This document shows, piece by piece, positions 22,162 to 63,490 of a DNA stretch of 64,000 nt (position 1 is its first letter; each line of letters begins with the position of its first letter). This DNA is from Macrostomum lignano (lineage: Eukaryota). The DNA lies in assembly GCA_002269645.1 (NCBI GenBank), contig NIVC01003976.1, positions 1 through 64,000 on the forward strand, written 5' to 3'. The notes under the pieces are model-generated. The model saw only the letters and a program-made list of their open reading frames with translations. It was not told where the DNA came from and searched no databases. Made by a program: the position numbers and the translations under genes.

Positions 22162-22203
<42 letters not shown>

Positions 22204-22216
22204 TACTTACTTACTT

Positions 22217-22247
<31 letters not shown>

Positions 22248-22300
22248 GACTAACTAACTAACTAATTTACTAACCAACCAACTAGTTTACTTACTGACTG
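22150..22300. repeat. (TAAC)n/(TTAC)n microsatellite
   Basis: Direct reading. Confidence 0.93.
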
Positions 22301-23959
22301 ACTGAGCTGGCACCTCTCAAACATAGACGCCCCTACGGTCATTCAGTCCAATGTAAAAGCTTAGCTGCACATTCGCTCCTGAAACCCCGCTGCATGCGTC
22401 AATCACTGGAGCGATCTCACGGTTTTTAGGCAACTCAAGTAGAATTTGCAGCAGCAGCATACTTAGCATGCTATTGATTATTTTATCGCTACAACTTAGC
22501 AGTATAGAGCCTATTAGCCCCACATCAATTCTTAAAATATGCTGCAGCAGACTCATGGCTTTCTCGATCGTTGATTTTAAGCCGTTTAGCTGTTTTCGGC
22601 CCACCTGCTCGTTCTCACACTGAGCTGCTTGTCGTGCTGCCCGTCAGAGCGGGTCAGATTAAAGTTTTGTTAATTTTTCGAGAACCTGGGCTAGCTCCGT
22701 AAAATACATTAACGTATTGGTTGATTGAATACATAAATCAGCTGGCTTAGTCAATAAAATGCAACTGTGCTGATGCTTCGATTGGTGCATCACGAGAGCA
22801 TTACGAGAGCAATAAAAGCTCGAGTGTACTTTGTTCGTTGTTTGTTTTATTAAATGCCGATTTTAAAGTGCCGACGGCGTCGAGGTGATGACTGAATGCT
22901 TGAGAGACTAGTTGAGGATGTCCGACAGTCGAGGCTTGATCAGCGAAACTAGAGAAATTCGCATCAGGGTGTTCATGGTCAACTGCATGGTGCCACCTGT
23001 TGAAGGTCTAGAAGCTCCGCCTGGGTGAAGGCCAGTGACCAACAAAGTCAGAGCTGATGCAGATACATGTGTTCGACGTGCTGATGAAGTTTGGAGGCTT
23101 GGCAAGACTCACTGAGGCGCAGTGCTGATTGGCGCTCAGGGTTGTACTGGATACACTAACGCTAATGAAAAAAAGCGACCTTCTGGCAGAATAATCGAAT
23201 ATCTCGACGGTTCGGTGGGCTGGCGACTTGATTCTTGTTTGAGAAGGTGCGCAACAAAAAGCTAGCCCGTGTTCTTGAATTTCGTGAGTCTGCGTTGCTC
23301 CGTTCCGGCGCAGCAAAAAAATTGTCAGGGGGAATTCCCCCCTCTTGGTTCGACGATCGGAAAAATCGCTTAGTCCTACTGTAAATAATATTATAGTGGG
23401 CACGAATAATATCGTATCTTCTTACTCGTATTAATAGTAATTGAACATATTACGCTTGCCAATCAGCAATTTATTTTTGTTATCAAGGTTTCTTATTTTT
23501 GTTTAAATTTCTTTTCTTATAAACACTATCATTATTTGTTTTACCGTGCCCCAACTAATAATAAGTTCAACTGTCCGCCTCAAATTTTGTGAAAGCCGTG
23601 AGGACTCAAAAATACAAGCCGTGAAGGCTAAAACGTAGGGTTAGGAATTAGGAACTTAGGCGAAATAGCAAATTTAGGAAAGACTAGCAATCTAGTGCGG
23701 CCCCCCTTCGGGGCGCCCAATAAGAAAGGAGCAAAAATAGTTCATGGAAAACAATAAAAAAACACATTTTCTTAAACACTAATTCCTTCTTCACATTTTA
23801 AAAATCACCTTATTCGTGTAAAATTGTCACGGACTAAGATGTTTGCAAAATTAAAAAATCACTTTTTCTCTAAAATTAACAAACAGTCAACAAAATATCG
23901 TTTCCCTAAATAGAAAATATTCCCAAGACAGCAAGCAACCCCCTCCAAAAGTGAACAAT

Positions 23960-24200
23960 CGCAGATAGCAAGCATCCTCTAATGCTCATAGCAAGAATCA
24001 CCACAGATAGCAAGCATCTGCAGATTAGCAAGCACCCCCCAGATATTATAGAAGCATCCACCCAGATAGCAAGCATCCACCCAGATAGCAAGCATCCTGC
24101 AGATAGCAAGCACCCCCCAGATATTATAGAAGCATCCACCCAGATAGCAAGCATCCACCCAGATAGCAAGCATCCTGCAGATAGCAAGAATCCCTAAATA
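23960..24200. repeat. GATAGCAAGCATCC-based degenerate repeat
   Basis: Repeated motif with a duplicated ~78-bp block. Confidence 0.8.
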
Positions 24201-24429
24201 GCAAGCATACCTGGATTGAAAGAATCCCATGCATGTAGCCAGCACCCCCTCTCCCAAATAGCAAGTATCCCCCCTCGAGAGCAAGCATCCACGAGACAGC
24301 AAGTAGCTAGTGCAAATGTTACTTCCGCTAATGCAATAATCGCTTTCTCAGGTTGTGCAACAATCCACGTCTCAGCGAGCGCAATAATCTCTTTTTTAGA
24401 CAGCGCAGTAATCAGCTTCTCAGCTAGTG

Positions 24430-27190
24430 CAATAATCCTTGGTTTATTAATAGCAATAATCCTTGATTAATCAAGTGCAATAATCCTTGGTTTATCAAGT
24501 GCAATAATCCTTGGTTTATCAAGTGCAGTAATCTTTGGCTTATAAAGTGCAATAATCCTTGGTTTATCAAGTGCAATAATCCTTTGTTTATCAAGTGCAA
24601 TAATCCTTGGTTTATCAAGTGCAATAATCCTTTGTTTATCAAGTGCAATAATCCTTGGTTTATTAAGTGCAATAATCCTTGGTTTATCAAGTGCAATAAT
24701 CCTTGGTTTATCTAGCGCAGTAATCCTTGGCTTATCAAGTGCAATAATCCTTGGTTTATCAAGTGCAATATTTGTTTATCAAGTGCAATAATCCTTGGTT
24801 TATCAAGTGAAATAATCCTTGGTTTATCAAGTGCAATAATCATTGGCTTATCAAGTGCAATAATCCTTGGTTTATCAAGTGCAATAATCCTTGGTTTATC
24901 AAGCGCAGTAATCCTTGGCCTATCAAGTGCAATAACCCTTGGCTTATCGAGTGCAGTAATCCTTGGTTTGCCAAGAGCAATAATCCTTGGTTTATCGAGT
25001 GCAGTAATCCTTAGTTTTCCAAGTGCAGTAATCCTTGGTTTATTAAGAGCAATAATCCTTGGCTTATCGAGTGCAGTAATCCTTGGTTTGCCAAGAGCAA
25101 TAATCCTTGGTTTATCGAGTGCAGTAATCCTTAGTTTTCCAAGTGCAGTAGTCCTTGGTTTATTAATAGCAATAATCCTTGAATAATCCAGTGCATTAAT
25201 CTCTGGCTTATCAAGTGCAACATTCTTTACTATCAAGTGCAATAATCCATGGCTTATCAAGCGCTGTAATCCTTGGCTTATCAAGTGCAATAATCCTTGG
25301 TTTATCAAGTGCAATAATCCTTTGTTTATCAAGTGCAATAATCCTTGGTTTATCAAGTGCAATAATCCTTGGTTTATCAAGTGCAATAATCCTTGGTTTA
25401 ACAAGTGCAATAACCCTTGGTTTATCAAGTGCAATAATCCTTGGTTTATCAAGTGCAATAATCCTTTGTTTATCAAGTGCAATAATCCTTGGTTTATCAA
25501 GTGCAATAATCCTTGGTTTATCAAGTGCAATAATCCTTGGTTTATCAAGCGCAGTAATCTTTGGCCTATCAAGTGCAATAATCCTTGGTTTATCAAGTGC
25601 AGTAATCCTTGGCCTATCAAGTGCAATAATCCTTGGTTTATCAAGTGCAGTAATCCTTGGCCTATCAAGTGCAAGAATCCTTGGTTTATCAAGTGCAATA
25701 ATCCTTGGTTTATTAAGTGCAATAATCCTTGGTTTATCAAGTGCAATAATCCTTGGTTTATCAAGTGCAATAATCCTTGGTTTATCAAGTGCAATAATCC
25801 TTGGTTTATCAAGTGCAATAATCCTTGGTTTATCAAGTGCAATAATCCTTGGTTTATCAAGTGCAATAATCCTTGGTTTATCAAGCGCAGTAATCCTTGG
25901 CCTATCAAGTGCAATAACCCTTGGCTTATCGAGTGCAGTAATCCTTGGTTTGCCAAGAGCAATAATCCTTGGTTTATCGAGTGCAGTAATCCTTAGTTTT
26001 CCAAGTGCAGTAATCCTTGGTTTATTAAGAGCAATAATCCTTGGCTTATCGAGTGCAGTAATCCTTGGTTTGCCAAGAGCAATAATCCTTGGTTTATCGA
26101 GTGCAGTAATCCTTAGTTTTCCAAGTGCAGTAGTCCTTGGTTTATTAATAGCAATAATCCTTGAATAATCCAGTGCATTAATATCTGGCTTATCAAGTGC
26201 AACATTCTTTACTATCAAGTGCAATAATCCATGGCTTATCAAGCGCTGTAATCCTTGGCTTATCAAGTGCAATAATCCTTGGTTTATCAAGTGCAATAAT
26301 CCTTTGTTTATCAAGTGCAATAATCCTTGGTTTATCAAGTGCAATAATCCTTGGTTTATCAAGTGCAATAATCCTTGGTTTAACAAGTGCAATAACCCTT
26401 GGTTTATCAAGTGCAATAATCCTTGGTTTATCAAGTGCAATAATCCTTTGTTTATCAAGTGCAATAATCCTTGGTTTATCAAGTGCAATAATCCTTGGTT
26501 TATCAAGTGCAATAATCCTTGGTTTATCAAGCGCAGTAATCTTTGGCCTATCAAGTGCAATAATCCTTGGTTTATCAAGTGCAGTAATCCTTGGCCTATC
26601 AAGTGCAATAATCCTTGGTTTATCAAGTGCAGTAATCCTTGGCCTATCAAGTGCAAGAATCCTTGGTTTATCAAGTGCAATAATCCTTGGTTTATTAAGT
26701 GCAATAATCCTTGGTTTATCAAGTGCAATAATCCTTGGTTTATCAAGTGCAATAATCCTTGGTTTATCAAGTGCAATAATCCTTGGTTTATCAAGTGCAA
26801 TAATCCTTGGTTTATCAAGTGCAATAATCCTTGGTTTATCAAGTGCAATAATCCTTGGTTTATCAAGCGCAGTAATCTTTGGCCTATCAAGTGCAATAAT
26901 CCTTGGTTTATCAAGTGCAGTAATCCTTGGCCTATCAAGTGCAATAATCCTTGGTTTATCAAGTGCAATAATCCTTGGTTTATCAAGTGCAATAATCCTT
27001 GGTTTATCAAGCGCAGTAATCTTTGGCCTATCAAGTGCAATAATCCTTGGTTTATCAAGTGCAGTAATCCTTGGTTTATTAAGTGCAATAATCCTTGGTT
27101 TATCAAGTGCAATAATCCTTGGTTTATCAAGTGCAGTAATCCTTGGTTTATTAATAGCAATAATCCTTGGCTTATCGAGTGCAGTAATCT
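24430..27190. repeat. 24-bp satellite (ATCAAGTGCAATAATCCTTGGTTT) with a ~982-bp higher-order duplication
   Basis: About 115 units. Diagnostic variant blocks recur with 982-bp spacing (25215 vs 26197). The array generates the 8-aa periodic ORFs LHLINQGL/DKPRIIAL. Confidence 0.98.
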
Positions 27191-27857: not shown

Positions 27858-28844
27858 CTAGCAATCTACGCCCCCCGTTGGGGAGCCAAAGAAATGCAAG
27901 ACACGTTTTTTTAATAAGCTACATGTATCCTTGAAATCTTAAAAAATCTCCTGTCAAACCTTGTAAGCCTTGACATGTCAGTAATTCCCCCCACAAGCTT
28001 TAAAATATCAACTCCCCCCCTTGACATCTCAGCAATGCCCCCAATAAGCCTTGGAACCCAAAAAAATCAACCTTAACCCAAGCCTAACCCTAACCCTAAC
28101 CTAACCCTAAAGCATTGAAATTTCAGTAATAATTCTCTCTAAGAGTCATTATAGCACTACTACAGCATTATAGCGATTCCCTGCAAGCCTCGACATCGTA
28201 GGGATTCCCAAATGAATCTCTTAACTTCGACATGAAGCTTCTTTTATTTTTTACATTACGCTTTTTTTTATCAGCGATCCCTCCCCTGAGGAGGCAGCAA
28301 ATAATGTAATAAAATTTTTTTCAATAAACTACATGTAGCTTCTGACTTTAGCCTTGAAATCTCATTTATACCCCCGTGAGCCTTGACATCTCAGCTATTC
28401 CCCCCGTAAGCCTTAACATGTCAGCGATGGCCCCCATAAACCTAGCAATTCCCAAATGAATCTTTTAACTTCGACATGACTTTTCTTTTATGTATACGTA
28501 GTGCTACTTTTATTTTCTACATGACTTTTCTTCTATCAGCGCCCCCCGTGGCGAGCCAACAAAGAATGCAATAAAAAATTGAGTAAAGTACATGAACTTT
28601 GAAGTAGCTTCTGACTTTTGCTTTGACATCACAGAAACCCCCCCCCCGTAATCTCAGTTATTCTCTGAGAGCCTTGACGTCTCAGTTTTTCTCCCCAGCA
28701 CAGCATTATGGCTGCATTTAATTTTTACATGACACCTTTCATGTCTGACATGATGCTTCTTTTATTCTACCATGATGCTTCTTAATTTTTTTAATGACAC
28801 TTTCATTAGTTTTTAAATAAGGCTTCTATGATTTTTTCTTGACG

Positions 28845-30380
28845 CTTCTATGATTTTTTACATGACGCTTCTATGATTGTTTACATGACGCCTCTATGAT
28901 TGTTTACATGACGCTTCTATGACATTTTACATGACGCTTCTACGATTTTTTACATGACGCTTCTATGATTGTTTACATGACGCTCCTATGATTTTTTTAC
29001 ATGACGCTTCTATGATTTTTTACATGACGCTTCTATGATTTTTTACATGACGCTTCTATGATTTTTTTGCATGACGCTTCTATGATTTTTTACATAACGC
29101 TTCTATGATTTGTACATGACGCTTCTATGATTGTTTACATGACGCTTCTATGATATTTTACATGACGCTTCTACGATTTTTTACATGACGCTTCTATGAC
29201 TGTTTACATGACGCTCCTATGATTTTTTAAATGACGCTTCTATGATTGTTTACATGACGCTTCTATGATTTTTTAAATGAAGCTTCTATGACATTTTACA
29301 TGACGCTTCTATGATTGTTTACATGACGCTTCTATGATTTTTTACATGACGCTTCTATGATTGTTATATGACGCTTCTACGATTTTTTACATGACGCTTT
29401 TATGATTGTTTACATGACGCTTCTATGACATTTTACATGACGCTTCTACGATTTTTTACATGACGCTTGTATGATTTTTACATGACGCCTCTATGATTGT
29501 TTACATGACGCTTCTATGATTTTTTACATGACGCTTCTATGATTGTTATATGACGCTTCTACGATTTTTTACATGACGCTTTTATGATTGTTTACATGAC
29601 GCTCCTATGATTTTTTTACATGACGCTTCTATGATTTTTTACATGACGCTTGTATGATTTTTACATGACGCCTCTATGATTGTTTACATGACGCTTCTAT
29701 GACATTTTACATGACGCTTCTACGATTTTTTACATGACGCTTCTATGATTGTTTACATGACGCTTCTATGATTTGTACACGACGCTTCTATGATTGTTTA
29801 CATGACGCTTCTATGATATTTTACATGACGCTTCTACGATTTTTTACATGACGCTTCTATGATTGTTTACATGACGCTCCTATGATTTTTTACATGACGC
29901 TTCTATGATTTTTTTCATGACGCTTCTATGATTGTTTACATGACGCTTCTATTATTTTTTACATGACGCTTCTATGACTTTTCATGGCGCTTCTATGATT
30001 TTTTACATGACGCTTCTATGATTGTTATATGACGCTTTTATGATTTTTTACATGACGCTTCTATGATTGTTTACATGACGCTTCTCTGATTTTTTACATG
30101 ACGCTTCTATAATTTTTTACATGACGCTTCTATGATTGTTTAAATGACGCTTCTCTGATTGTTTACATGACGCTTCTATGATTTTTATATGACGCTTCTA
30201 TGATTGTTTACATGACGCTTCTATGATTGTTTACATGACGCTTCTATGATTTTTTACATGACGCTTCTATGATTGTTTACATGACGCTTCTATGATTTTT
30301 TACATGACGCATCTATGATTTTTATATGACGCTACTATGATTTTTTATATGACGCTTCTATGATTTTTACATGACGCTTC
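28845..30380. repeat. 21-22-bp minisatellite (TTTTTACATGACGCTTCTATGA)
   Basis: About 70 tandem units. Confidence 0.97.
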
Positions 30381-30448
30381 TTTTTAAAAAGTCTTTTAGT
30401 TTTCCTGACGTTGAAAAGCTTTAATTAAAAAAATTATACTCTATGAAA

Positions 30449-32285: not shown

Positions 32286-33539
32286 AACTACGCACAGCTT
32301 CGTGTTAAAAGGCACAGATAAAAATATTGAACTAATTGAATCAATTCATTGCGCAACCGATTTCACAGTCAGTCAGTATCAGCCTCAGGTAAAGTTAACA
32401 AAAACATTGCGCAATCTAAATCAACCCTCCAATACACAGCAGCAGTGAGAAGTTGAACCCTCCCCCCAACAATCTTTGCAGATTAAAGTACAATCTTTGC
32501 AGAAAGTTAAAAGTATGGAAATAGTTTTTCAAATGCGGTGCTTTTTCTTTTCATATTTAAAGCAAACAACTTATATCCCCGAACTCAGCGTTGCAAGATC
32601 TTGCCAGCAATATAAGTTTCTCCTCTCAAAGTTTAAAACTCGAGGAACAGTTAGCGTTTGAAACTGTCTGATTTATAGCATTGAAGTATCGAGTGTACGT
32701 TCACTGCCTGCTTGCAAGATGATGCATTGAATTTCAATGTCCAACAAATACACAGGACTGCCCATTGAAAGGCAGGAAAACTTATCAGTAGCCATATCAT
32801 TGCGCAATTATCTATAAAGTCAGCCAGTGAGCCAGGGTTGACAAATTGAAATCAAGAAATTTTCTATGACAAATTGCTCTGATGCAGTTGAGATTTCGGA
32901 ACAGAAAATTATACCATTCTGTTCAGTTTTTCAAACTCTTTCCAACGGTGTGATTCACTTTTCTGTAGCTTGAAAATTAAAAGCAGAAATTAAGGTGCAA
33001 GTTTTCCCGTTTCTTACTTGCAGAGCGCAATGTACACTCTGTGATGAGTTAAAAAAATCAAGCCATCCATTCTCGCGCAGTGTGCACCTCCACCCCTTTT
33101 TAACACTGAGCAAGTAGGCCGCCAATTCTCAAGTGCCGGCGACCCTCCCCCAGCTGAAATGAAATACACTGCAGAGATAGGAGAAAAGTTGTGGCGCAAC
33201 CATACAAAATAGCGTCAAGTGGGAAGTCCATGGAATGCGATATATAGACATCTGGTCTGGCTGTCTGGTTTGTGCTGTTTTCTGCTTTTTTGAAGCACTT
33301 AAAATTGAAATTTGAAAATGAATTTTAAATTGTAGCATCGTCGGGACATTTGACATGTTTTGGTACCGGTTTGAAAGTTGAGTTGCAAGAATCCTAGGAG
33401 GAGATCGTCGACAAACCCGGCCCACCGGCCCACCCTACCACCGGACCACGACGTCAGCTTTAGTATATAGAGGATTTAGGTGTTCAAACAAATTAAACAA
33501 TAATGCAGGGCTGCAGCATGATAGGGACATTCGTGGAAC

Positions 33540-35700
33540 TCGTGGAATTCGCTGAACACTTCGGACACGACCCACAGCGTTGACTCGTAGAAGGCGTCGG
33601 CCTTTTGTCTGGACTGCAGCCGTCGCAGGACGCGGTCTCCTGGCCGAATGTCGTGGTCTGCTGCCTTGGCCCCTTGGTCGGCGTAGCGCTTCATCTTCTT
33701 CTTGGGCTGCTGATCCTTGTCCTTAGTGGCTGCTCTCGTCACGTCCACCGGCTGCGAGTGCTGGAGGTTGGGGATCGTGTCGATGATCTGCCGCCCGAAC
33801 AGGAGGCTGGCGGGCGCGATCCCAGTAGCGCTGTGCGGAATGCGTCTGTACGCAGCCAGGTACTCGTCGATCGCTGCCGTCCAGTCCCTGCCTTCGGCCA
33901 CGGCCGCACGGATGGCCTTGTTGAGCCCCTGGTTGCACCTTTCCGTAGCGCCGTTGGCCTGTGGGTACAGCGGAGTGATCCGGTGGTGCCTGGCGCCTTG
34001 GTCCGCCAGGAAGCTGCTGAACTCGGCCGACGCGAAGGGCGGGCCGTTGTCGGTCGTCACTTTCATCGGCTGCCCAAAGATGCTGAACCAATTCCGCAGC
34101 ACGTGGACCAGTGGGAAGCGCGAGAAGTGGCCCGTGCAGACAAACAGCGACTTGCCGTTGACGGGCCCGAGAAAGTCCATGCCGAGCTCCAGCCAGGGCG
34201 CCGCCGGTAGTTCGGTCGGCTTGAGCGGCGTCGCCTTCGGCGTGGTCTCACGGGTGCAAATCTGGCAGCTTAGGCAAGCCGCCACGTGCGCCTCTACCGA
34301 TGCTGGGCCAACAGCAGACCTTGGCTTGCAGGCGATCCAGCGTCTTTCTGATGCCCTGGTGGCCTTGGTGCGCCAGCTGCAGGCACCGGTAGCGCAGTGC
34401 TGTAGGCATGAAGATCTGGCCCAGACGCAGCAGCAGGCCGTCGAGCTCGGACAACTCGTGAGCGACGCCGTGCAGCCCCTTCAGGTTCGGGTTGCTCTTG
34501 TCCCAGCGATGACAGCGGATGCCGTGAAGCGTAGCTTGGACTGTAGCATCTTGGTCGGAGGTCGCTTTGATGGTCACCAGGCTGATGGACATCGGCGTTG
34601 CCGCTTGGACTGCCGTGGCCACGTAGATGACGTCTTCTGTTCACCAACGTTGTTGGGCGGCATCGACAGCGGCTGGCGGCTCAAAACGTAGAACGGGTTG
34701 TTGGCGCCGGGCTGGTACACCATCTGGAACACGAGGTCTTGCAGCCGCAGTCCCATTCGCTCGATCCGTGGCGGTGGCCGTGATCCCGGCTGAACAGCGA
34801 GAACAGCGGCTTGTGGTCTGTGATGACCTTGAACTGTCCGCCGCCGCTGAGGTAGAGATAGAATTTCAGTCCGCCGTACTTCACCGCCAGGGCCTCACGC
34901 TCCGTTCCATCTGGGAGTTGCGCTGCTCCGTCGGGCTCAGGCTGCGGCTGGCGTAGACCACCGGCCGTGTCGATCTGTCCGGCTGCACCTGGGCTAGGAT
35001 GGCGCCGACGCCGGTCGGGCTGGCGTCTACGATCAGCTGGGTCTACAGTTCGCTGTTGAAGAATGTCAGCGCCTGGCTGCTGGAGATCGTGCGCTTGATG
35101 TCGTTGAAGGCGGCTTCCTGCTGCTCGCCCCATGTCCACTCGGTGGCTCGCTTCGTCACCTCCCGCAACAGCTGGTGGGCCTTATCGGACAGGTTGCTGA
35201 TGAAGCGGGCCACGAAGGTGACGAGGCCCAGGAAGGAGCGGACCTCGGACGCGTTGGTCGGCCGCTTGAAGTTGCGGATGGCCTCCACCTTCTCCTTGCT
35301 CGGGTGGATGCCGGCGGCCGTGAGTCGCATGGCGAGGAAGTTGCCCTCCCGCTGGGCGAACCGACACTTCTTGGCGTTCAGTGTGATTTTGTTCTCCTTT
35401 GGCCGAGCCAGACAGTCTCGAAGACGCTGATTGTGCTCCTTGATGTCCTTCGTGTACACCAGGATGTCGTCATACATCCACTTTACGCCCGGGAGGCCGT
35501 TCAGGACGGAGGTCGTCACCCGCTGCAGGATCTCCGAGGCGGACATGTACCGATGGGCGTGGAGAACATCAGCAGGTCCCTGGACTCTTTGGCGACTTCA
35601 ATTTGATTGAAGACTTTGGCGACGTCGAGCTCTGAGAAGTACACAGACCCGGCCATCACGTCCCTCACCTCCTCCGCCAATCATGTGCGGCCACGTTGGT
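33540..35700 (-). pseudogene. Decayed Ty3/Gypsy pol fragment (RT, RNase H, integrase)
   Basis: RT: SVYFSELDVAKVFNQI and VKWMYDDILVY...KCRF. RNase H: LIVDASPTGVGAILAQ, EREALAVKYG and VITDHKPL. Integrase: HQGHQG...C..C, MDFLGP, TTDNGPPF and PQANGATER. The RT-RH-INT order is Gypsy-type. Multiple frameshifts, internal deletions, no gag or paired LTRs. Confidence 0.92.
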
Positions 35701-45042: not shown

Positions 45043-48000
45043 ATGCCACTGGATCCAAAGTACAGCAGCCTTCCATATATTGTAAGTTGCATTTTTTAAT
45101 TTAATTTTGTTCACGCCTAAACTTTTAAGTGGTACTGTGGTGGTAGTATTATAGTATAAAGCAGACAAACATCGCTAGAGTTTTAGTATATTATAGTATA
45201 AGACACACACACAGACAGACAGAGTTTTGATTTTTAAATGGGCATTTCCGCCAAATAGGGACACAAATTGTGTCCGAGTGTGCAAAGAAGAAGAAAAATG
45301 TTGAAAACAGGAAATCTAACTAGAATTTGTTATTAAATTTCTTTTTTTATCTTGTAGAAGCACAAGAAATTTTCTGGTAACAATAAAAGTTGCCGATAAA
45401 AGTTATACTGATCTAAGAAGACGATTAATACCGTAGGAGAATAAAATTTTATATTGAGGCATAATTGCTTGCTTATAATTAACTTTCTTTCAGTCAATAA
45501 TTTTTTAATTGTTTCTTAATGCTTTTAATCAACTTTTTAATTCCGATTTTGTTATTTTTGCGCATAAGTTCATACAATATTTTTTAACTTTGTCAAAATG
45601 TTTTTTTCTGCGCGATATACCGAATGTAAATCTCTAATTTTACTTTTCAGTAACTAGCCGATCACCGTAATTATTCAGAAGTTCCAGTGCAACTTTGCAA
45701 GCAGCAAGAAATGCATATGCTTCCACAATCTAGAGAAAATTTTTCTGAAGCAATATTACAAGTAAATGTGGGGAAAATTGATTTAATACTATGTAAATTA
45801 CTATCTACATACTATAGTGCAAAATGTAAATTACATTTTTATTGATAAATAAACAAGAAATTAATGTGAAACTGTTTTATTTTCCAGCTTTTATACCTAA
45901 TGATAGTCTTGTAAGACTGATTTTGAGAAAAAAACTAGCAAAAAATAAAATAAAGGGTACAACATGAAAATACATCTCGTGTAAGTAGTGTGCTTACTAC
46001 ATTTAAATGTTAATATTTAAGGTATTTTGACAGATTAAGGTTCAGCAGACCACTTTTTGTGAAGCTCTGTATGTCAGCAATCCATAAATATATCGTTTTC
46101 AGCTGATAAAAAGCACTAAAAAAATTATTGGGTGCAACATGAGTACAATCTTGTGGTTAAGATGTCACATCGAAAAAAAATTAATGTCTTAGAAAAATGT
46201 ATTAAGCAAATTCTATTGCTAAAAAATATATTGATACATCATCGCAAAGATGTTTTCCTTCATTTAAGCTAAAAAACGTGAAGATTGAAAGCCTTATGAG
46301 TAAATGAGAGGGTACAACATGAGTACAAATGATGCAAAAACTTACCGTTTATACTTTTTGGTATAGCAAGAAAACTGACAAAAATCAATGACTTCTTCTT
46401 GCAGGTTTTGTGACGAAAAGGAATGATTTTAACAAAGTTTAATGTGTTTTTTTCATGAAACAAAGAGAATTACTATAAAGAATGTTTTCTTCGCTCTTTT
46501 ATTCAATGTTGAAGTTAAAAATTGTGTGTTTGGACATCCAAAAAAGTGGCGTCTACATAAGTTTAAAATGGTTTTTCAACATTAATTTTGCCGATTAACA
46601 ATCTTTAAATAGCTTTAAATTGAGCAAAAGTGGTTGTATTTTTCAGTTTAAGTCCTTGTTTGACTTCAATTAGCTGGCTTAAGCTACAATTCATCATTTT
46701 GTTTGTTGAAGTGTAATTTTCCGATAGTGCCTAATTGGCGGAAATGCCCAAATGTATAGATAGGCCTAGATATTAAATACCAGTATATTAAACAGCACAA
46801 ATAAGTACATTTATTGTAGTGAATATGGTTTTGAGTTAGTATCACTCTTTAATTCATTGATGGGTTTTCTATGTAGGCCTAGTGAAACTTAACAAATATT
46901 GACTGCACCTTTAAACTGTTTATAAGATGCAATTGTGCACCTTGTCTCTAGTGAAAAAAAGCCTTTTTTATAGTGTTCCGCCGTAAGGAGGGTCCATGTA
47001 CCATAGCTGTAGCCGTAAGCAAAACTACGGCTTATTCCAATTCTCCATATCCGTAGCCGTAGGGACCCCGAAATTACCATATTCCCGTAGTTCCCATAGC
47101 CATAGCCGTAGTTTTAACAAAAGTGCTTAAACAACTGCAAATTAAATTAGAAAATAAAAGAAACACTCGATTGCCTTTGTAAGATTATATTTCGTCTTTT
47201 TTCAGAGCAACAATACTTGATCGTTACTGAAAGTACTAACGCTAAATTTTTTCACATTAATAAAAATTAGAGTTTGCTAGTGTTTTATTGTACTTTTTTA
47301 GGTATATTTTATAAGTTTCTAGGTTGATAATACAGTTTACTAAACGTATATTTGTTTTACTCTACCTGTTTCTAAAAATTTTTTAATTTTTAACATTAAT
47401 AACTACGGCTATGGGAACGGTTAAAGTCAAAACTGGGGAGTCAGAAAATGTAGAAAAAAATTTGTTGTTTCAATTAGTAATTTCTTTTTACAATTTTTTA
47501 TATCTCGGTGAAGTGGTCTCGAAAAACATTTTTAAAGCACAAAATATACCCCTTGTTAAGTTTCCTACCAATTTGTTAATTTTAACTCTTACGGAACTGT
47601 ACGGACGTAGAATTAGAAACTAAATATAATATTCAACAATTAAATGTTTTATACTAATGCATAAAACTAATTTTTTGTTCAATAAATATTGCAATAAATG
47701 CTTTTTAAAGTAAATATTTAGTTGGATTTTGTTAAACTGCTTAATTTGTTTACTTCGCGCCTGTTTGTGTTCTGAAATACTCTCGTTTTTTAGCTTACGA
47801 ACAAATAGGCAAACGACAATGATGTATAAATAATTTTACTGAATGGATGGAATGACACGCTACGTATAGGTGTAGGTGTCCTTAAGTTGGTTATAAAATT
47901 GCTTCATCCATGCTGTAATTTATATTGGTAGTCTAGTTCAGATTAATATTTTATTATCCATGTCCCATTTGATTTGCCCATGTCAATAATTTTTTTGCTA

Positions 48001-51000
48001 ATGACGTAGTAATGAGACATGTAGTGTAAATACGAATTCGTAAAGCTTAGAATTACTTTGAAATTGAGACATGTTTTTATAGCCATAGTCCATAGACTAT
48101 TCATATTATCAACTAATACTGAACTGCTTACTATAGCCCATAGGCATAACTATGCACTCGCACTTGTAAATATACCCCATGTATAGCTAAATAATTAATA
48201 AGTAGCAGGTAAAACAATTAATAACTTTTTTTATTTTTTTTAACTTTCAAACTTTGTATATTAAAATGTAAATAGAATATAAAAAGTGGCTTGGAATATT
48301 TTGAAAAAGATTAATATATTTTCATTCATGATATATTACAACTAGAGTTTTAAGAACTTAGAACATAATTACAATATAAGAAGCAAAAAGTAATATCTAT
48401 TCTCTTCAGAAATGCATTTGAATATAGCAATATTTCCTATTGGATAGTTTTGATCAAAAATCAGGGATTTAATGTCTACTAACAGATTTAATTTATATTG
48501 TAATCTATTTTATATTCCTAATCTGCTCTAATAGAAATTATTTAACCTTATTTAAAATGATGTTTTTCACTTTTATTCAAGCAATGCCAGGACTTCTTTG
48601 AGACTGCTCTTCATATGCCTTTCATTCTGAGCTCTAGGCCTTAGGCCTTACCTACCTAAAGCCCAATGTAAACAATGAAACTAGTGGAGTTCCTGCATGT
48701 CATCTTCACAATTGGTTGAGTGAATCAAGCACTTTATTTATGTACAAACCTAGTCTATCCAAACAAACTGTTGCAATGTTGGCGACTCCACTTAGCAGCC
48801 CTCTTCTGCCCACAGGCCACAGCTGGTTCAGGAGGTGCTGCGCAGCTTACTTTTGGATTATGGCACCGCGAATTCTGGTGGCTATGTGGCCTACATTTTC
48901 GCACATACCACGAGGCGCACCTTTTTCTTTTTAAGGACCTTATGTTTGTCAGCGTGCTATTGTGTAGGCCTATTGTGTAGGCCTGAGATATACCGAAAAT
49001 ATTGCTTTGAATTTAAGTTAATTGATCTGCTTCAGGACTTTAATACTTGTGCCTAAAACTTCTAAAACCTATTGTTGTTGTCTGTTCGTCTTTTTCTTTT
49101 TAAAAATTAAAAGGCCTTAAAAGCTTTATTTAGAGCTTTGTGAGATTCGAATTTGTCTTGAAACTTGAAACTTGAAACTGGATAGGGGCATAGCCAAATA
49201 ACTTGTCTACCCTTCTTGAGACAGCCACATGGATTTTCTGTTCTGATCTGTGCGGAACTTTAAGCGCATGGTTTAAAAATGTTCACTTATGTCAAATCGG
49301 GGGTATCGGTTTACCTCGTCTTACTTTACTTACACATACATGCATACGAGTATTTAGCTTCAAAATTGATTTTGACTTGGAAGGCTATTATATCTGAGAC
49401 AAATGAAAATATGGAATATTTTGGGCTTGTGCCGGGCTATCGTAGCTATATGTTCGTTTTCTCTATTTGGTACTCGTACTCGTACACTGGCATTCTGTCT
49501 TGAGTGCTCTTTACGAGTATAGAGTTGTTTTTTATCTTCCTCTTTACTTTCCATCGTACTTTATAGTGTAGCTACAGTACGGAAGTTTTATCTCCATAGG
49601 TTGTGTCGTTATCGTAAGGATTATATTCTGTTTCTACAATACATTTATCGCATCGAGTACAGCCGGAGCTAAGTGTTTTTCTCGTTTTATGACATTTTCT
49701 CTCCTTGGCTTAAAAGTAATGTAAGAAGTTTAAAACTACATGTACTTTCCTCAACTAACACCATCGTCGCGTGTAATCGACGTCATACTTTACAATTCTC
49801 GAGCATTCATGCAGCTGACATCGCAGAAGAAGTTCCTTTGCCGGCTGATGTCAGTTTGCGGAGGCAGATCGACACACTGAGAGTGCAACCAGCGCTTGCA
49901 ACCATCGCACTGCACCCACTGGGCATCTGATGGCTGCAGACAGATCTCAGCATCGCATGCATTAACCTCGGCGACAGCACTCCGAGCGCCACGCCCTCTT
50001 CCACGGCCACGGCCTCGTCCATACATGGTGTTCCTGGTAGGCATGTGCAGGTGAGTGCTCGATACTGAACCTGCAGTGGGGGGCATTTTTCGGTTCGCCA
50101 TACGTGATGCATCTTGGAGATGTCCCGCATGTCGGACAACTTCAGCATCTCCAGTATGTTGCGGAACTCCTGAATATCCCGCTCCTCAATCAACCAAGAT
50201 AACACCTTTAGCGGATTGTCAGCCGATCGTATAGCCGATAGGACGTCCTGTGGCGTGATGACATTGCCTCGGCTGACAACGATTTGATCACAGCGGCGCT
50301 TAACAGCCGCGCCGACACCATCGGCAGCTCCTTTGCCATGGCCAGCCTCGGTGTACAACCATTGCCACTCAGTAATGTCAAGGTGCAGCAGTAGACGATT
50401 GAAGATATATATCATCTTCCTGCTGCGATATTGACTGGATGGTGAGTCGCTAAGCATCGACACCCGGCGAATGGGGACGCCCAGATCTTCGCACTCGTTC
50501 AGAAAAAACAGTAGTACAGGCTTGAGGTGCGCGGCAATTGCATCGGCAGTCTTAGCCTTGACGTCCGAAACAGTAATAAATGAAGTCGGCTTCCATCCAC
50601 TGACGTATCCAACTCCCTGATGCAGGACTATACTGTCTTGATCGCCAAAGTGCGCTGACTGCACCTCTTTGCTGTATTTTGCCGCATAATTCTCCGAGAA
50701 GTCGACGTGCAGTAAAAGGTGGCCAGGCTGCAGCGTCAACTTGAGGAACTTTATTGCGCGAAACTGGTTCCTAATGCGGTGAAAGTGGGAGGCAAAGGCT
50801 CGCAGTTTGCAATGAAGCAGACTGACTGCTTCCTGGCACTCTGCTATCAACTTGACCACCTCTACACCGCTGCGACCGTCCGTGCGCTGTCTCCAAGCCT
50901 CATACGTCACGCGAGGCTTCGCAGCCGCTACCTCGTTGACAACTGGCGACTTCGTCCTGCAGTCATCACAGGCACGCATGAGGCAGGCAGGAGAATCGTC

Positions 51001-54000
51001 CCTGCAGACGAAGAGCTGCAGCAGATCGCGAAGGCTGGTGCAGGGTATCAGGCGAGCAGTGTGCATAGCCTTCGCCAGATACTCCAAATTTGTGCATTGC
51101 ATGCACATGCACAGCGGCCTGTCGCAGAGACGCGGCTTGACTACCTGTAATGAATTGAGACAAATTCGATTGAATTGGAATTGAGTCGGAGTTGTTCACC
51201 AAAGTCTCTAGATTGAAGTGTCGGTCTCATATTTTTTTAATTTATTTTTTCGTAGGAATAACATATATAGCAGCGAAGAAGTACTGTACGTAGAAATCGA
51301 TTAGATTTGGGCTTTGTCAATCAAGGGAGGGTGTAAAATGATATGTTAGCTGCACAAGCTGGCACAGTTCATAGCAGTATCAGATAATTAATTAAATTTA
51401 CCTCGAACGGTTTCGTCTAAATGTAGAGAGGCTGATCTGGCGACGCTCAGGAAACTCGGCGAGGTACTTGCTATGCAGCGACTTCAGGGTGTCACACAAG
51501 TATCGCTTCTGCCGCTTCTCCTTTTCGCCAGTCACGCGGTCGACGCCCGTGATTGTCTCATGCTTTGCAGCACTGGCACGGGAATTTTCATCGTCATAAA
51601 AGAAGTCGACAATGTGCTGTTGTCTCTCTTTGATTCGTTTTACTGCTTGCCTTTTCAGAATTTTCGCTGTTGCACCAAAACACTTCAGCACTGCCTTGCG
51701 CTGTGCCCCAACTGGTGTGCTTGCCACAATGCACCGTGTCATCTTCCGGCAGATGGAAAAACGCCGTACTCTGGCAATCGCATCCTGTATTACATGCCTC
51801 GCCATTTCAGCATCTTTGTGTCGGCGCTCCGCTTTAGCTGATTGGCGCTGCTCTCTGCGCAGTTTGAGACGCAACTTGTTGATGGTCCGCTGATGACTAA
51901 AGATAGCATCGTCGTAGTGCTCAACCAACTTCCTGCGCTCTCGTAACCGGGCAGCATCAGAGCGGGAAAGTTTTGACCGTGTCGTCCTTTCTCCGGCATC
52001 TGGGGGTGGTGAACAGCCATGGTAGCGTCGATAGGCGCGCCGTCTCTCATGCTGCAGGTAGTCAGCATAGCTGTCAAATTTTTTTTCTATGTAGCGCTGC
52101 TGCTGTTCCTGCTTCACCTGTTTCCTAGATGGCCTAAATGGCATGCTCTGAAAAGGTTAGAAAATACATATAATGAGAACGGGAATTTCAGCTCAGATAT
52201 ATTGGCATATTTTTTCTCTCTCCGTATTTTATGCACTACTGCTAGTAGCAGTAGCATTCTCTCCTTTCCTTTTTCTTTTCATCTTATACTTTTCCGTAAT
52301 ATTTTCATCTCTAGCTGTTTCTTGTTTTCTTCTTTTTCTTTCATAGCTGAAAGGTACACTGTGGAGATGGAACATTTTACTGTCAGAGAGATAATGAGTG
52401 AACGCTTTGTCTGTATTTTTTGCTGTCTTCTTGTAGATTTCAAGATATTAAATTACGAGTATCAAGTTATTTGAGCATGATTACATAAGTTATTCTAATG
52501 TTATAATCTTCATGATGCCCCAAAATTATTGATGCTAGGTAAATCTGATTTCAATTAAATAAACCAATGAATTTGGTTCTAAGTAAATTTAAAGTCAATC
52601 AGACCTGATTAGTTGGTGTTAGTAAGTGACGTCTCTGATTAATCTTTGATATTCTACTATCTTTGGTGGCCTTAGACTAGAATAGCTAGTCATTAAAAAT
52701 TTTAACTGACAGTCAATAAATAAATGTTTAAAGTAATTTTTACAAAAATTAACTCAACTTATTCAGCATGAAATTTAAAGCATAATAAATATCATCAAAA
52801 ATAACTAACTAAATCCTAATTCATTACAAATTGTACATTAATTGGCAATAAAATTAAATTAGGTCCTCCCTGCTGTAAAGCAAAAAAAATGCTTCTTTAT
52901 AGGGTTCTTTGCAGTGCCTTTATGAAATATCTAAGCTTTTCATTGTACATGCTCCACACAGTGGGCTTCCGGAGAAAAAAATCATGACAAAAACTAACAT
53001 ATATGACATTCAGGAGCCAACAAAGAGTGCCATTTAGTAAAGAAAAAAAATGCTTCAAGCTTGATAAGTGTGTAATAACATATTGTAATTCTAAAAGCTG
53101 GCAATTATTCATTTTGTTACAACAGACTACTGGAGAAAATCACTTTGTGCTCCCTAACTATTAAAAAGTATCTTTATATTGTTGTAGAATATTTTACAGT
53201 AGGTAATATGTAAGGGTTTTTTTTAATAAAAAAGCTTGGATTTAATGCTAAATTATTTCTAAAATAGAAAAGTGAATAATCCCATTAGATACATCAATGT
53301 AGATTAGTCTTTAACCTATTCTCATATGAGCATACATGTGGGATGTCATAATTAATGTTAACCACCAAAACGAAGAATATTCGAACTCCAACAGGGTTTG
53401 TACAATAAAATCATTACTCATGCATGCATTTAACGCAAATTAACTTAAAACTTTCAATATCTACCTTAATTCCTACATTTTTGTAGCCCTAATTTGTAAA
53501 TCATATAGACATTTTTCGCACGTGGTCAGCGTGGTTGAATTTCCGCCAAAAAAATTATCGCTGAAAAAAGGACATATTTTGTCTTTTAGAGGGGCGAAAA
53601 AGACTATTTTTTTTAATTATGGTAATATTATTTATATTTCACGGTTTAATGGAAGATTAAACCAGTCATACTCATTAAAAAACAGATAAAACTTGGTATT
53701 ACAAAGTTTGAATGGTGTAAACTCGCGATGCCCTCGTTTTGACTTTGCCCCGGAATCTACAGAATGTGACAGCAAATACCATATTTCCGTAGTCGTAGCC
53801 ATAAGAGCAGCTAGCTACCGTAGGCGTATCTGTAGCTGCCGTAGGCACCTATTTTACCATATTTGCCGTAGGATCCCGTAGCTGTAGCTACAGCTACGGC
53901 GGAACACTACTTTTTTACTTATAATGCTTTTAATTTTTTACTACAAGGCTACAATATATTTATCAATGTTTTAGGTTATGGAATTAGGGAATTGGGATCA

Positions 54001-60174: not shown

Positions 60175-60765
60175 AACCCTAATTTAAATCCTGAACCATA
60201 ACACTAAACCCTAATCTAAATCCTGAACCATAACACTAAACCCTAATCTAAATCCTGAACCATAACACTAAACCCTAATCTAAATCCTAAACCATAACCC
60301 TAAACCCTAATTTAAATCCTAAACCATAACCTTAAACCCTAATCTAAATCCTAAACCATAACCTTAAACCCTAATCTAAATCCTAAACCATAACACTAAA
60401 CTCAAATCTAAACTCTAAACCATAATTCCAGACCCTAATCTAAACCCTAAACCATAACCCTAAACCCTAATCTAAATACTAAACCATAACCTAAACCCTA
60501 ACCAAAACACAAAATCATGACCCTAAACCCTAATCTAAATCCTAAACCATAACCCTAAACCCTAATCTGAATTCTGAACCATAACCCTAAACCCTAATCT
60601 AAATCCTAAACCATAACCCTAAACCCTAATCTAAATCCTAAACCATAACCTTAAACCCTAATCTAAACCCTAAACCATAACCCTAAACCCTAATCTAAAT
60701 ACTAAACCATAACCTAAACCCTAACCAAAACACAAAATCATAATCCTAAGCCCTAATCCTAACCG
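60175..60765. repeat. 32-bp minisatellite rich in CCCTAA-like motifs
   Basis: AACCCTAATCTAAATCCTAAACCAT... units with a 32-bp period. Confidence 0.9.
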
Positions 60766-61379: not shown

Positions 61380-63490
61380 GGTCATCTGAATTATCTCTGA
61401 AGTATCGTCTGAATCGTACCTGAATTGTCATCTAAATTGTACTTTTAAGTATCATCTGAATCGTCCCTGAAGTATCATCTGAATCGTGTCTGAAGTATCA
61501 TCTGAATCGTCCCTGAAATATCATCTGAATCATCCCTGAAATATCATCTGAATCATCCCTGAAGTATCATCTGAATCATCCTTGAAGTATCATCTGAATA
61601 ATCCCTGAAGTATCGTCTGAATAATCCCTGAAGTATCATCTGAATAATCCCTGAAATATCATCTGAATCATCCCTGAAGTATCATCTGAATAATCCCTGA
61701 AGTATCATCTGAATAATCCCTGAAATATCATCTGAATAATCCCTGAAGTATCATCTGAATCATCCCTGAAGTATCATCTGAATCATCCTTGAAGTATCAT
61801 CTGAATAATCCCTGAAGTATCATCTTAATTATCCCTGAAGTATCATCTTAATTATCCTTGAAGTATCATCTTAATTATCCTTGAAGTATCATCTTAATTA
61901 TCCTTGAAGTATTATCTGAATCGTCCCTGAAGTATCATCTTAAATATCCCTGAAGTATCATCTGAATAATCCCTGAAGTATCATCTTAATTATCCCTGAA
62001 GTATCATCTTAATTATCCTTGAAGTATCATCTTAATTATCCTTGAAGTATCATCTTAATTATCCTTGAAGTATTATCTGAATCGTCCCTAAAGTATCATC
62101 TTAAATATCCCTGAAGTATCATCTTAATCATCCTTGAAGTATCATCTTAATCATCCTTGAAGTATCATCTTAATTATGCTTGAAGTATCATCTTAATTAT
62201 CCTTGAAGTATCATCTTAATCATCCTTGAAGTATCATCTTAATTATCCTTGAAGTATCATCTTAATTATCCTTGAAGTATCATCTTAATCATCCTTGAAG
62301 TATCATCTGAATAATCCCTGAAGTATCATCTGAATCATCCTTGAAGTATCATCTGAATAATCCCTGAAGTATCATCTTAATTATCCCTGAAGTATCATCT
62401 TAATTATCCTTGAAGTATCATCTTAATTATCCTTGAAGTATCATCTTAATTATCCTTGAAGTATTATCTGAATCGTCCCTGAAGTATCATCTTAAATATC
62501 CCTGAAGTATCATCTGAATAATCCCTGAAGTATCATCTTAATTATCCCTGAAGTATCATCTTAATTATCCTTGAAGTATCATCTTAATTATCCTTGAAGT
62601 ATCATCTTAATTATCCTTGAAGTATTATCTGAATCGTCCCTGAAGTATCATCTTAAATATCCCTGAAGTATCATCTTAATCATCCTTGAAGTATCATCTT
62701 AATCATCCTTGAAGTATCATCTTAATCATCCTTGAAGTATCATCTTAATTATCCTTGAAGTATCATCTTAATTATCCTTGAAGTATCATCTTAATCATCC
62801 TTGAAGTATCATCTGAATAATCCTTGAAGTATCATCTGAATAATCTCTGAAGTAGCATCTTAATTATCCCTGAAGTATCATCTTAATTATCCTTGAAGTA
62901 TCATCTTAATTATCCTTGAAGTATCATCTTAATTATCCTTGAAGTATTATCTGAATCGTCCCTGAAGTATCATCTTAAATATCCCTGAAGTATCATCTGA
63001 ATAATCCCTGAAGTATCATCTTAATTATCCCTGAAGTATCATCTTAATTATCCTTGAAGTATCATCTTAATTATCCTTGAAGTATCATCTTAATTATCCT
63101 TGAAGTATTATCTGAATCGTCCCTGAAGTATCATCTTAAATATCCCTGAAGTATCATCTTAATCATCCTTGAAGTATCATCTTAATCATCCTTGAAGTAT
63201 CATCTTAATTATCCTTGAAGTATCATCTTAATTATCCTTGAAGTATCATCTTAATCATCCTTGAAGTATCATCTGAATAATCCCTGAAGTATCATCTGAA
63301 TCATCCTTGAAGTATCATCTGAATAATCCCTGAAGTATCATCTGAATCATCCTTGAAGTATCATCTGAATAATCTCTGAAGTAGCATCTTAATTATCCTT
63401 GAAGTATCATCTTAATTATCCTTGAAGTATTATCTGAATCGTTCCTTAAATATTACGAGCGTATCTCAATCAAACCTGAAGTATCATCTG
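61380..63490. repeat. 23-bp satellite (ATCATCTTAATTATCCTTGAAGT)
   Basis: About 90 units with recurring variant order. Confidence 0.97.

What the first reader, a model, noticed from the sequence alone, without database searches (positions are those of the whole stretch)
46963..53917. Possibly intact transposon combining hAT-like ends (8-bp TSD) with a Sola-like DDD transposase
Seen in sequence: perfect 15-bp TIRs, a perfect 8-bp TSD, matching subterminal CCGTAG arrays, and a single large gene of about 699 aa after two 1-nt repairs. Established: 5'-YAGTG termini, 8-bp TSDs and subterminal repeats are hAT hallmarks. The protein lacks hAT motifs (BED finger, CxxH, RW, terminal E). Its D(FSENY)...SD(xxxQY)...(GHGK)xxD layout, with Asp codons at 50701, 50446 and 50320, resembles Sola-type transposases, which make 4-bp TSDs. 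I found no inner TIR pair for a nested insertion. Inference: either an unclassified DNA-transposon family with its own end and TSD signature, or a hAT shell that captured a foreign transposase.
Basis: partly seen in the sequence, partly recalled or inferred. Interest (0 to 1): 0.8.

Follow-up and report, generated by a model that had tools for sequence, protein, structure and literature searches.

The report
Sola2 transposase gene inside hAT-like ends
A 6.9-kb mobile element carries a nearly intact transposase gene of the Sola2 type, but its ends and 8-bp insertion footprint look like those of the unrelated hAT family, so either the gene is cargo in a foreign shell or this Sola2 branch has changed how it inserts.

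Summary
There are perfect 15-bp TIRs (46971-46985 and 53895-53909), a perfect 8-bp TSD (CTTTTTTA), and CCGTAG arrays packed into the last ~140 bp of both ends. One minus-strand gene of 699 codons sits inside, with a 257-bp intron and two 1-nt frame defects.

The protein is not hAT. Its profile matches the published Sola2-1_HM catalytic core (hhalign 99.1 %, E 1e-18). An AlphaFold model (pLDDT 88) places D148, D233 and D275 on a compact RNase H fold, and a PHD finger closes the protein.

I recovered five complete relatives (35-41 % identity in the catalytic region), four from metagenomes and one from Bombyx mori. All have 5'-GGGT termini and 4-bp TSDs, as published for Sola2. The window gene belongs to a sister clade whose ends could not be recovered, because its contigs are 3.9 kb or shorter.

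Best reading (0.5): a hAT-type enzyme supplied in trans last inserted this unit, and the Sola2 gene is cargo, either nested or captured.

Rival (0.35): a Sola2 lineage that evolved new ends and an 8-bp stagger.

Only other copies from the host genome can decide between them.

The parts
46963..46970 (.). Left target-site duplication, CTTTTTTA
   Evidence: Identical to 53910-53917 and directly abuts the TIR.
46971..46985 (+). Left terminal inverted repeat, TAGTGTTCCGCCGTA (5'-TAGTG fits the hAT YARNG consensus)
   Evidence: 15/15 complementary to 53895-53909.
46986..47111 (+). Left subterminal array of CCGTAG / CCATAG / GCCGTAA units, including the composite unit TACCATATTCCCGTAG at 47075. A further inverted copy lies at 47403-47418.
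48043..48056 (+). Weak candidate inner end: AAGC followed by TTAGAATTAC. It pairs with 53085-53098 to give a 5048-bp inner unit with a 4-bp TSD.
   Evidence: This is the only inner pair with at least 10-bp TIRs and a 4-bp TSD. Such a pair appears by chance in 11 % of shuffles, and it does not resemble the GGGT termini. It is listed as a lead, not as a feature.
49790..51144 (-). Exon 2 of the transposase gene: Cys-rich region, RNase H-like DDD catalytic domain and C-terminal PHD finger. There is a 1-nt frame defect near 50040-50010. The stop codon is at 49792-49790.
50275..50721 (-). RNase H-fold catalytic core, with Asp148 (50703-50701, in HVDFSENY), Asp233 (50448-50446, in SDSPSSQY) and Asp275 (50322-50320, in GHGKGAADG)
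   Evidence: These are invariant columns in the 35-sequence alignment. The AF2 model orders the elements b1-b2-b3-a1-b4-a2-b5-a. hhalign matches the Sola2-1_HM core.
49820..49945 (-). PHD finger at the C-terminus. It is reached only after the frame is repaired.
   Evidence: Pfam PF00628, E 1.7e-7, above the gathering score. The relative P0002 has the same C-terminal finger.
51145..51401 (-). Intron of 257 nt (GTAAAT...TTACAG), 34 % GC. The closest relatives lack it.
   Evidence: L002 reads straight through this position.
51402..52144 (-). Exon 1: basic N-terminal region with the family motif DDxNSRxxAxKxETIT...KRQKRYL. One G is missing at its 3' end.
53774..53894 (+). Right subterminal array: five CCGTAG units on the + strand, two composite TACCATATTT(G)CCGTAG units, and a 24-bp perfect palindrome at 53876-53899
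53895..53909 (-). Right terminal inverted repeat
53910..53917 (.). Right target-site duplication, CTTTTTTA

Best explanation
This is a composite element. The 6939-bp unit was last inserted by a transposase that makes 8-bp staggered target cuts and recognises 5'-TAGTG termini with CCGTAG subterminal repeats. That points to a hAT-type enzyme supplied in trans from elsewhere in the genome.

The only gene inside is cargo. It encodes a 699-codon Sola2-family DDD transposase with a Cys-rich region, a compact RNase H catalytic core and a C-terminal PHD finger. It got there in one of two ways: a Sola2 element nested into a non-autonomous hAT-like element and its own short ends are no longer recognisable, or an internal Sola2 segment was captured.

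Shown: the ends, the TSD, the gene structure, the Sola2 affinity of the protein, and the 4-bp TSD and GGGT ends of its relatives. Inferred: that the 8-bp TSD reports the enzyme of the last insertion, and that this enzyme was not the encoded protein. The encoded protein now carries two frame defects, so it is probably inactive or truncated before its PHD finger.
For: 1. TSD length is a property of the enzyme, and it is 4 bp in every Sola2 element with known ends. That covers five complete relatives recovered here: L005 GTAT, L032 TGCT, L024 CTAG, L041/L042 ACAT and Bombyx L003 ATAT. It also covers the published elements from Dictyostelids to animals (PMC3627910; PMC10741241 citing Bao et al. 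2009).

2. Those relatives share a conserved 5'-GGGT(N)2-3TT terminus with 12-28-bp TIRs. The window element has none of this.

3. The window's ends combine three hAT hallmarks: an 8-bp TSD, a 5'-YARNG terminus, and a short TIR with dense subterminal hexamers (hAT criteria from established knowledge).

4. At 6.9 kb the unit is larger than the complete metagenomic relatives (4.4-5.4 kb). The single inner candidate pair (10-bp TIR, 4-bp TSD AAGC) would give a typical 5.05-kb Sola2 inside a 1.9-kb shell.

5. With one copy only, a short imperfect Sola2 TIR would sit at noise level, so failing to find inner ends is weak evidence against nesting. Chance alone gives 0.54 pairs at 12/14 or better with a 4-bp TSD.
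Against: 1. There is no hAT transposase, and six-frame Pfam scans of both non-coding arms find no hAT remnant.

2. No GGGT-type end lies in the correct orientation inside the element. No inner pair reaches 12/14 with a 4-bp TSD. The 10-bp candidate is compatible with chance (P = 0.11).

3. The cargo is a complete gene from start codon to stop, with its intron and all catalytic residues. That is what an autonomous element looks like, and it is unusual for captured DNA.

4. I know of no described case of a whole foreign DDD transposase gene carried between hAT ends.

5. No second copy of these TIRs could be examined.
Confidence: 0.5

Rival explanations
1. This is an autonomous element of a divergent Sola2 lineage. 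Its own transposase recognises TAGTG termini and CCGTAG-type subterminal sites and integrates with an 8-bp instead of a 4-bp stagger. The ends are cognate, and their hAT look is convergent.
For: 1. A single full-length transposase gene lies between perfect TIRs and a perfect TSD. The element has no other coding capacity.

2. All invariant family residues, including D148, D233 and D275, are present.

3. No credible inner ends were found.

4. In an NJ tree the window protein groups with proteins from JGI sample 3300040801 (P0002, P0005, L002, L085, L086). P0008, P0010 and P0067 join that clade more loosely. The whole clade is sister to, not nested in, the GGGT/4-bp elements. A change of ends on that branch therefore contradicts no observed relative.

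5. GGGT-type relatives also carry subterminal repeat arrays (GTAATCTCTGTTAC, 5-8 copies), mostly in direct orientation at both ends. The window element has the same layout.
Against: 1. A doubling of TSD length, from 4 to 8 bp, between transposases 35-41 % identical in the catalytic region has no precedent that I know of. Sola2 keeps 4 bp from amoebae to insects (PMC3627910).

2. The lineage would have had to acquire the 8-bp TSD, the YARNG terminus and the short TIR with hexamer arrays all together, and end up matching another superfamily.

3. The evidence rests on a single copy. Ends of the closest clade could not be recovered.
Confidence: 0.35
2. The TIR/TSD pair is a coincidence or an assembly artefact, and the gene is a stranded or domesticated Sola2-derived gene that is not inside a mobile unit at all.
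For: The region is AT-rich, and the TSD is low in complexity (CTTTTTTA). The window is highly repetitive.
Against: A perfect 15-bp inverted repeat abutted by a perfect 8-bp direct repeat never arose in 200 shuffles, and neither did any 12/6 pair. The same rare hexamer is concentrated at both ends (P = 7e-22). The TIR itself contains that motif.
Confidence: 0.03

Closest known systems
Sola2 DNA transposons (Sola superfamily; Bao et al. 2009; reference Sola2-1_HM from Hydra; family E.12 of Majorek et al. 2014)
   Same: The transposase is homologous. The family profile matches the Sola2-1_HM RNase H core over 124 columns (hhalign 99.1 %, E 1e-18). The motifs match in order: DF[AS]ENY, E[IV]QSxH[FW], [ST]D...HD, SDxxxxQY[KR], W.[FY]...HGK. 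It is a DDD triad on a compact RNase H fold with no insertion domain. Relatives have subterminal repeat arrays.
   Different: The TSD is 8 bp, not 4 bp. The terminus is TAGTG, whereas relatives have GGGT (animals and metagenomes) or GAA/GAG/GTT (Dictyostelids, PMC3627910 supplement). The TIR is 15 bp with hexamer arrays within 140 bp of the ends. The protein sits in a separate deep clade and has a C-terminal PHD finger.
Non-autonomous hAT elements (Ac/Ds-like architecture)
   Same: 8-bp TSD, a 5'-YARNG terminus (TAGTG), a short TIR, and clustered CG-containing subterminal hexamers. (Ac uses AAACGG; that comparison is from memory.)
   Different: There is no hAT transposase, BED finger, insertion domain or hAT dimerisation domain anywhere in the element. 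Foldseek found no Hermes-like match. The insert is a complete transposase gene of another superfamily.
Chimeric Sola2-Fanzor elements of Dictyostelids (Bao & Jurka 2013, PMC3627910)
   Same: They set a precedent for Sola2 elements that recombine with or carry foreign modules, with one end region shared and the rest replaced.
   Different: In those elements the ends and the 4-bp TSD remain Sola2 and the passenger is the foreign gene. Here the apparent passenger is the Sola2 gene and the ends are foreign.

Membership tests
Sola2 | Transposase homologous to Sola2 reference transposases | tested here: met
   hhalign of the 35-sequence family profile gives 99.1 % (E 1e-18) against the Sola2-1_HM core, 97.4 % against S. 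purpuratus Sola2, 24 % against Sola1-1_AP and 13 % against Sola3-1_HM. The reference sequences come from the PMC3985635 supplement.
Sola2 | DDD catalytic triad on an RNase H-like fold | tested here: met
   D148, D233 and D275 are invariant in 35 sequences. The AF2 model (pLDDT 88) places them on b1, after b4 and on the helix after b5. Foldseek finds only weak matches, all to RNase H-like domains such as PIWI, NurA and terminase. Catalysis itself was not tested.
Sola2 | 4-bp target-site duplication | tested here: not met
   The TSD here is 8 bp, CTTTTTTA. No 4-bp register fits the sequence. Relatives recovered here have 4 bp.
Sola2 | Termini like those of related Sola2 elements (G-initial; GGGT in animal relatives) | tested here: not met
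   The terminus is TAGTG. No GGGT-type end lies in the inward orientation inside the element.
hAT | 8-bp target-site duplication | tested here: met
hAT | Short TIRs beginning with 5'-YARNG | tested here: met
   TAGTGTTCCGCCGTA, 15 bp. The consensus is from established knowledge and was not re-derived here.
hAT | hAT transposase (BED finger, RNase H fold split by an all-alpha insertion domain, C-terminal hAT dimerisation domain, DDE) | tested here: not met
   Pfam finds no hAT domain in the gene or in six-frame translations of both arms. The third acidic residue lies 10 residues after b5, so there is no insertion domain. Foldseek against PDB returned no match at E <= 0.001 and no hAT (Hermes) entry among the top 50 listed.
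hAT | Target consensus nTnnnnAn | tested here: inconclusive
   CTTTTTTA has T at position 2 but T, not A, at position 7. One site cannot test a consensus.
hAT | Other genomic copies of the same TIRs mobilised by a hAT transposase | not testable with these tools
   The host genome is not in the searchable collections. The window protein is not on record. There is no second TIR copy in the window or in the fetched loci. The viral-contig hits are single chance 15-mers.
P element / other 8-bp-TSD superfamilies | Cognate transposase (THAP9/Tnp_P_element, MULE, Merlin and others) inside the element | tested here: not met
   No such Pfam domain was found in the gene or the arms.

The most novel reading that the evidence does not exclude
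A lineage of Sola2 DDD transposases has switched from the superfamily-wide 4-bp target stagger and G-initial ends to an 8-bp stagger with hAT-like TAGTG ends and hexamer arrays. That would be a natural example of a transposase retuning its transpososome geometry and end recognition within one protein family.
Probability: 0.35. Interest if true: 0.8.

Novelty: new variant of a known kind. Interest (0 to 1): 0.45.

Why it matters
TSD length and terminal sequence are the main criteria used to assign DNA transposons, and especially their non-autonomous derivatives and MITEs, to superfamilies.

If the gene is cargo, this shows that a whole transposase gene of one superfamily can travel inside the ends of another. 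Protein-based and end-based annotation pipelines would then classify such an element in conflicting ways.

If the ends are cognate, it would be the first Sola2 lineage with an 8-bp TSD. Closely related enzymes with 4-bp and 8-bp staggers would form a tractable pair for asking what sets target-cut spacing in an RNase H-fold transposase.

Either way, this work defines a deep, previously unnamed Sola2 clade with a C-terminal PHD finger. It also documents a conserved GGGT terminus and 4-bp TSD for its sister clade.

Tried and rejected
1. hAT transposase: rejected. There are no Pfam hAT domains, no insertion domain and no Hermes-like structural match.

2. Sequence search of PDB with the family profile: nothing significant.

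3. Nested Sola2 with GGGT-type ends: none in the right orientation. No inner pair reaches 12/14 TIR identity with a 4-bp TSD. One 10-bp/4-bp pair at 48047/53094 is compatible with chance (P = 0.11). It is kept only as a lead.

4. A shorter TSD register (2 or 4 bp): incompatible with the sequence read directly.

5. The 257-bp interruption as a TE insertion rather than an intron: it has no TIRs. Removing it as an insertion gives the same junction as splicing, so it is treated as an intron.

6. Finding other copies:
- The exact-protein look-up failed.
- The closest clade comes only from JGI sample 3300040801, on contigs of 3.9 kb or less with no ends.
- A TIR search of the fetched loci found nothing.
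- A TIR scan of viral contigs gave only single chance hits.
- P0024 is not on record.
- The Pinctada and ENA loci (L004, L001) showed no clear ends.

7. Remnants of any transposase in the non-coding arms: none.

8. Repeats shared between the element and the rest of the window: none.

9. Host identification through Rfam, tRNAs and Pfam on large ORFs: uninformative, only repeats and a Gypsy remnant.

10. The Bao et al. 2009 and Yuan & Wessler 2011 papers are not held in the library. Their content is cited only through papers that quote them.
Full report

Yes. TAGTGTTCCGCCGTA lies at 46971-46985, and its exact reverse complement lies at 53895-53909. CTTTTTTA abuts both ends, at 46963-46970 and 53910-53917. 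This bounds a 6939-bp unit. The 15-mer occurs nowhere else in the window, even with three mismatches allowed.

I scanned for inverted repeats that span the gene and are flanked by direct repeats. This pair ranks first. No pair as good as 12-bp TIR plus 6-bp TSD arose in 200 composition-preserving shuffles.

The hexamer CCGTAG/CTACGG occurs 18 times in the 64-kb window. Eleven of those copies fall in the outermost 150 bp of the two ends (binomial P = 7e-22). They are part of a longer unit, TACCATATTY(N)CCGTAG, found at 47075, 53777 and 53855. A 24-bp perfect palindrome at 53876-53899 abuts the right TIR.

**2. The gene.**

The gene lies on the minus strand.
- Exon 1 (52144-51402) encodes a basic N-terminal region.
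- A 257-nt segment (51401-51145) has GT...AG boundaries and 34 % GC. It behaves as an intron.
- Exon 2 (51144-49790) encodes a Cys-rich region, the catalytic domain and a PHD finger (PF00628, E 1.7e-7).

The closest relatives read straight through the intron position with ...FYRFRPDHIVRPKP.... This aligns residue for residue with ...FRRNRSR|VVKPRL.... The copy therefore lacks one G at the exon junction (AGG|G became AG|G).

A second 1-nt shift lies near 50040-50010, between the CxC...C motif and the GRGRGR/PHD tail. With both corrected, the length is 2100 nt, or 699 codons plus stop.

Coding GC is 52-54 % (GC3 62 %). The arms, the intron and the flanks are all 30-34 % GC.

**3. What the protein is.**

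Pfam has no model for the protein, apart from the PHD finger. A database search found 80 relatives, all unnamed. They come from Lepidoptera, a leafhopper, bivalves and host-associated metagenomes. The best match is 51 % identical.

In a 35-sequence alignment, D148, D233 and D275 are invariant, within the motifs HVDFSENY, SDSPSSQYR and EAGHGKGAADG. AlphaFold2 run on that alignment gives a confident model (pLDDT 88, pTM 0.86). The secondary-structure order is b1-b2-b3-a1-b4-a2-b5-a, as in RNase H. The three Asp residues sit where a DDE/D triad sits. There is no insertion domain between b5 and the last helix.

Foldseek against PDB finds only weak matches, all to RNase H-like domains (PIWI, NurA, terminase). 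It finds no hAT, P or RAG-type transposase. A profile search of PDB sequences is empty.

The supplement of Majorek et al. 2014 (PMC3985635) prints the RNase H cores of Sola1-1_AP, Sola2-1_HM and Sola3-1_HM. Profile comparison against these gives:
- Sola2-1_HM: 99.1 %, E 1e-18, over 124 columns
- S. purpuratus Sola2: 97.4 %
- Sola1: 24 %
- Sola3: 13 %

. The transposase is therefore of the Sola2 type.

**4. What the relatives' ends look like.**

One scan of metagenome contigs with the family profile returned 80 loci. I defined ends by inverted-repeat scans and by finding where copies stop aligning. This gave four complete metagenomic elements of 4.4-5.4 kb. A fifth complete element, in Bombyx mori, is 13 kb.

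| Element | Coordinates | TSD |
|---|---|---|
| L005 | 127-5479 | GTAT |
| L032 | 1823-6268 | TGCT |
| L024 | 861-5474 | CTAG |
| L041/L042 | 1405-6250 (L041) | ACAT |
| L003 (Bombyx mori) | 14045-27104 | ATAT |

. All begin with 5'-GGGT (GGGTCATTCTAC, GGGTGATTCTAC, GGGTTGTTCTAC, GGGTGAATTTCC, GGGTCATACACA). Their TIRs are 12-28 bp. Further single ends (L034, L040, L045, L046) also start with GGGTCATTCC.

This agrees with the literature. Sola elements are described as DDD transposons with 4-bp TSDs (PMC10741241, citing Bao et al. 2009). Dictyostelid Sola2 elements have 12-22-bp TIRs and 4-bp AT-rich TSDs (PMC3627910).

These relatives also carry 5-8 copies of a 14-mer, GTAATCTCTGTTAC, in their subterminal zones, mostly in direct orientation. 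The window contains no equivalent of that motif.

**5. Where the window protein sits.**

I built a neighbour-joining tree of the catalytic region, rooted on Sola2-1_HM. The window protein groups with proteins from a single JGI sample, 3300040801 (P0002, P0005, L002, L085, L086). P0008, P0010 and P0067 join this clade more loosely. The clade is sister to all the GGGT/4-bp elements and the insect and mollusc sequences.

All contigs of that clade are 3.9 kb or shorter and contain no ends. The window's own protein is not on record in the assembly index. The key question is what ends this clade normally has. It could not be answered with the data available.

**6. Is there a nested element?**

- No GGGT-type terminus lies in the inward orientation inside the element.
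- No inner pair has 12 of 14 or more matching TIR bases with a 4-bp TSD. Chance alone would give 0.54 such pairs.
- The only perfect inner pair is TTAGAATTAC at 48047 and 53094, with TSD AAGC. It would delimit a 5048-bp unit, a typical Sola2 size, inside a 1.9-kb shell. However, such a pair appears in 11 % of shuffles, and it does not resemble known Sola2 termini.
- Six-frame Pfam scans of both arms find no hAT or any other transposase remnant.
- No part of the element is repeated elsewhere in the window.

**7. Weighing the two readings.**

TSD length is set by the transposase, not by the ends. It is 4 bp in every Sola2 element with known ends, including enzymes far more distant from each other than the window protein is from the GGGT group. 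The window's ends differ from its relatives' ends in every respect, and they match hAT in TSD length, terminal pentamer and end architecture.

The simplest mechanistic reading is that a hAT-type enzyme acting in trans performed the last insertion, and that the Sola2 gene rode along. I give this 0.5.

Against it: the cargo is a complete gene, no hAT trace and no clear inner ends are present, and I know of no precedent for such cargo.

The alternative is a Sola2 lineage that evolved new ends and an 8-bp stagger. The tree permits it, and it is what a lone full-length transposase gene between perfect TIRs would normally mean. I give it 0.35. Coincidence or artefact is very unlikely (0.03).

**8. 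Novelty and verdict.**

The protein is a new, deep clade of a known superfamily. The combination with hAT-like ends and an 8-bp TSD is not described in the literature I could search. It rests on a single copy. It is a good lead that a genome-wide copy census would settle quickly, and it is of moderate interest until then.

Noticed in passing
window 33129-35546 (minus strand): A decayed Gypsy-type retrotransposon pol. Broken ORFs carry RVT_1, RT_RNaseH, Integrase_H2C2 and rve in order, in a GC-rich island (54-63 % GC).
   Followed up: partly
window 12764-16739, 24426-27189, 28771-30381, 61382-63439 and about 20 more arrays: The window is packed with different minisatellites of 20-40-bp period, up to 118 copies each. 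One array (60175-60758) has a 32-bp unit that contains telomere-like AACCCTAA. This suggests a heterochromatic or subtelomeric region.
   Followed up: no
window 53876-53899: A 24-bp perfect palindrome, CCGTAGCTGTAG|CTACAGCTACGG, built from the subterminal hexamer. It overlaps the inner five bases of the right TIR. The left end has no counterpart.
   Followed up: partly
window 47075, 53777, 53855: The hexamers are part of a 16-17-nt unit, TACCATATTY(N)CCGTAG, present once at the left end and twice at the right. All copies are on the + strand, so the two ends are asymmetric.
   Followed up: partly
L005, L022-L028, L032, L070 (metagenome relatives): GGGT-type Sola2 relatives carry 5-8 exact copies of GTAATCTCTGTTAC clustered 0.2-1 kb from both ends. 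They also share a conserved AAAGCAGAGCACAGGC about 130 bp from the 3' end. Both are candidate transposase-binding or regulatory sites.
   Followed up: partly
L001 6322-9087 and 10001-11713 (ENA contig_15350): An intact 570-aa homologue (P0006) lies 0.9 kb downstream of, and on the same strand as, a THAP9/P-element-type transposase gene. No TIR pair enclosing both was found. P elements also make 8-bp TSDs.
   Followed up: partly
L022, L025, L027, L028: Contigs of one Sola2 family have flanks that do not match across the element. The left flank of L022 and the right flank of L025 share AGCG, so the metagenome assembler appears to have joined flanks of different insertions through the repeat.
   Followed up: partly
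window 49790-52144 versus its arms; L002 1500-3500 versus its flanks: There is a sharp GC contrast: coding sequence is 52-59 % GC (GC3 62 %), while the arms, intron and flanks are 23-34 % GC. The contrast appears both in the window element and in its closest relative's contig.
   Followed up: no
window 3835-3929 (minus strand): ARAGORN calls a 95-nt tRNA-Arg(CCT)-like sequence inside a microsatellite-rich stretch. Rfam did not confirm it at gathering score, so it is probably spurious or a pseudogene.
   Followed up: no
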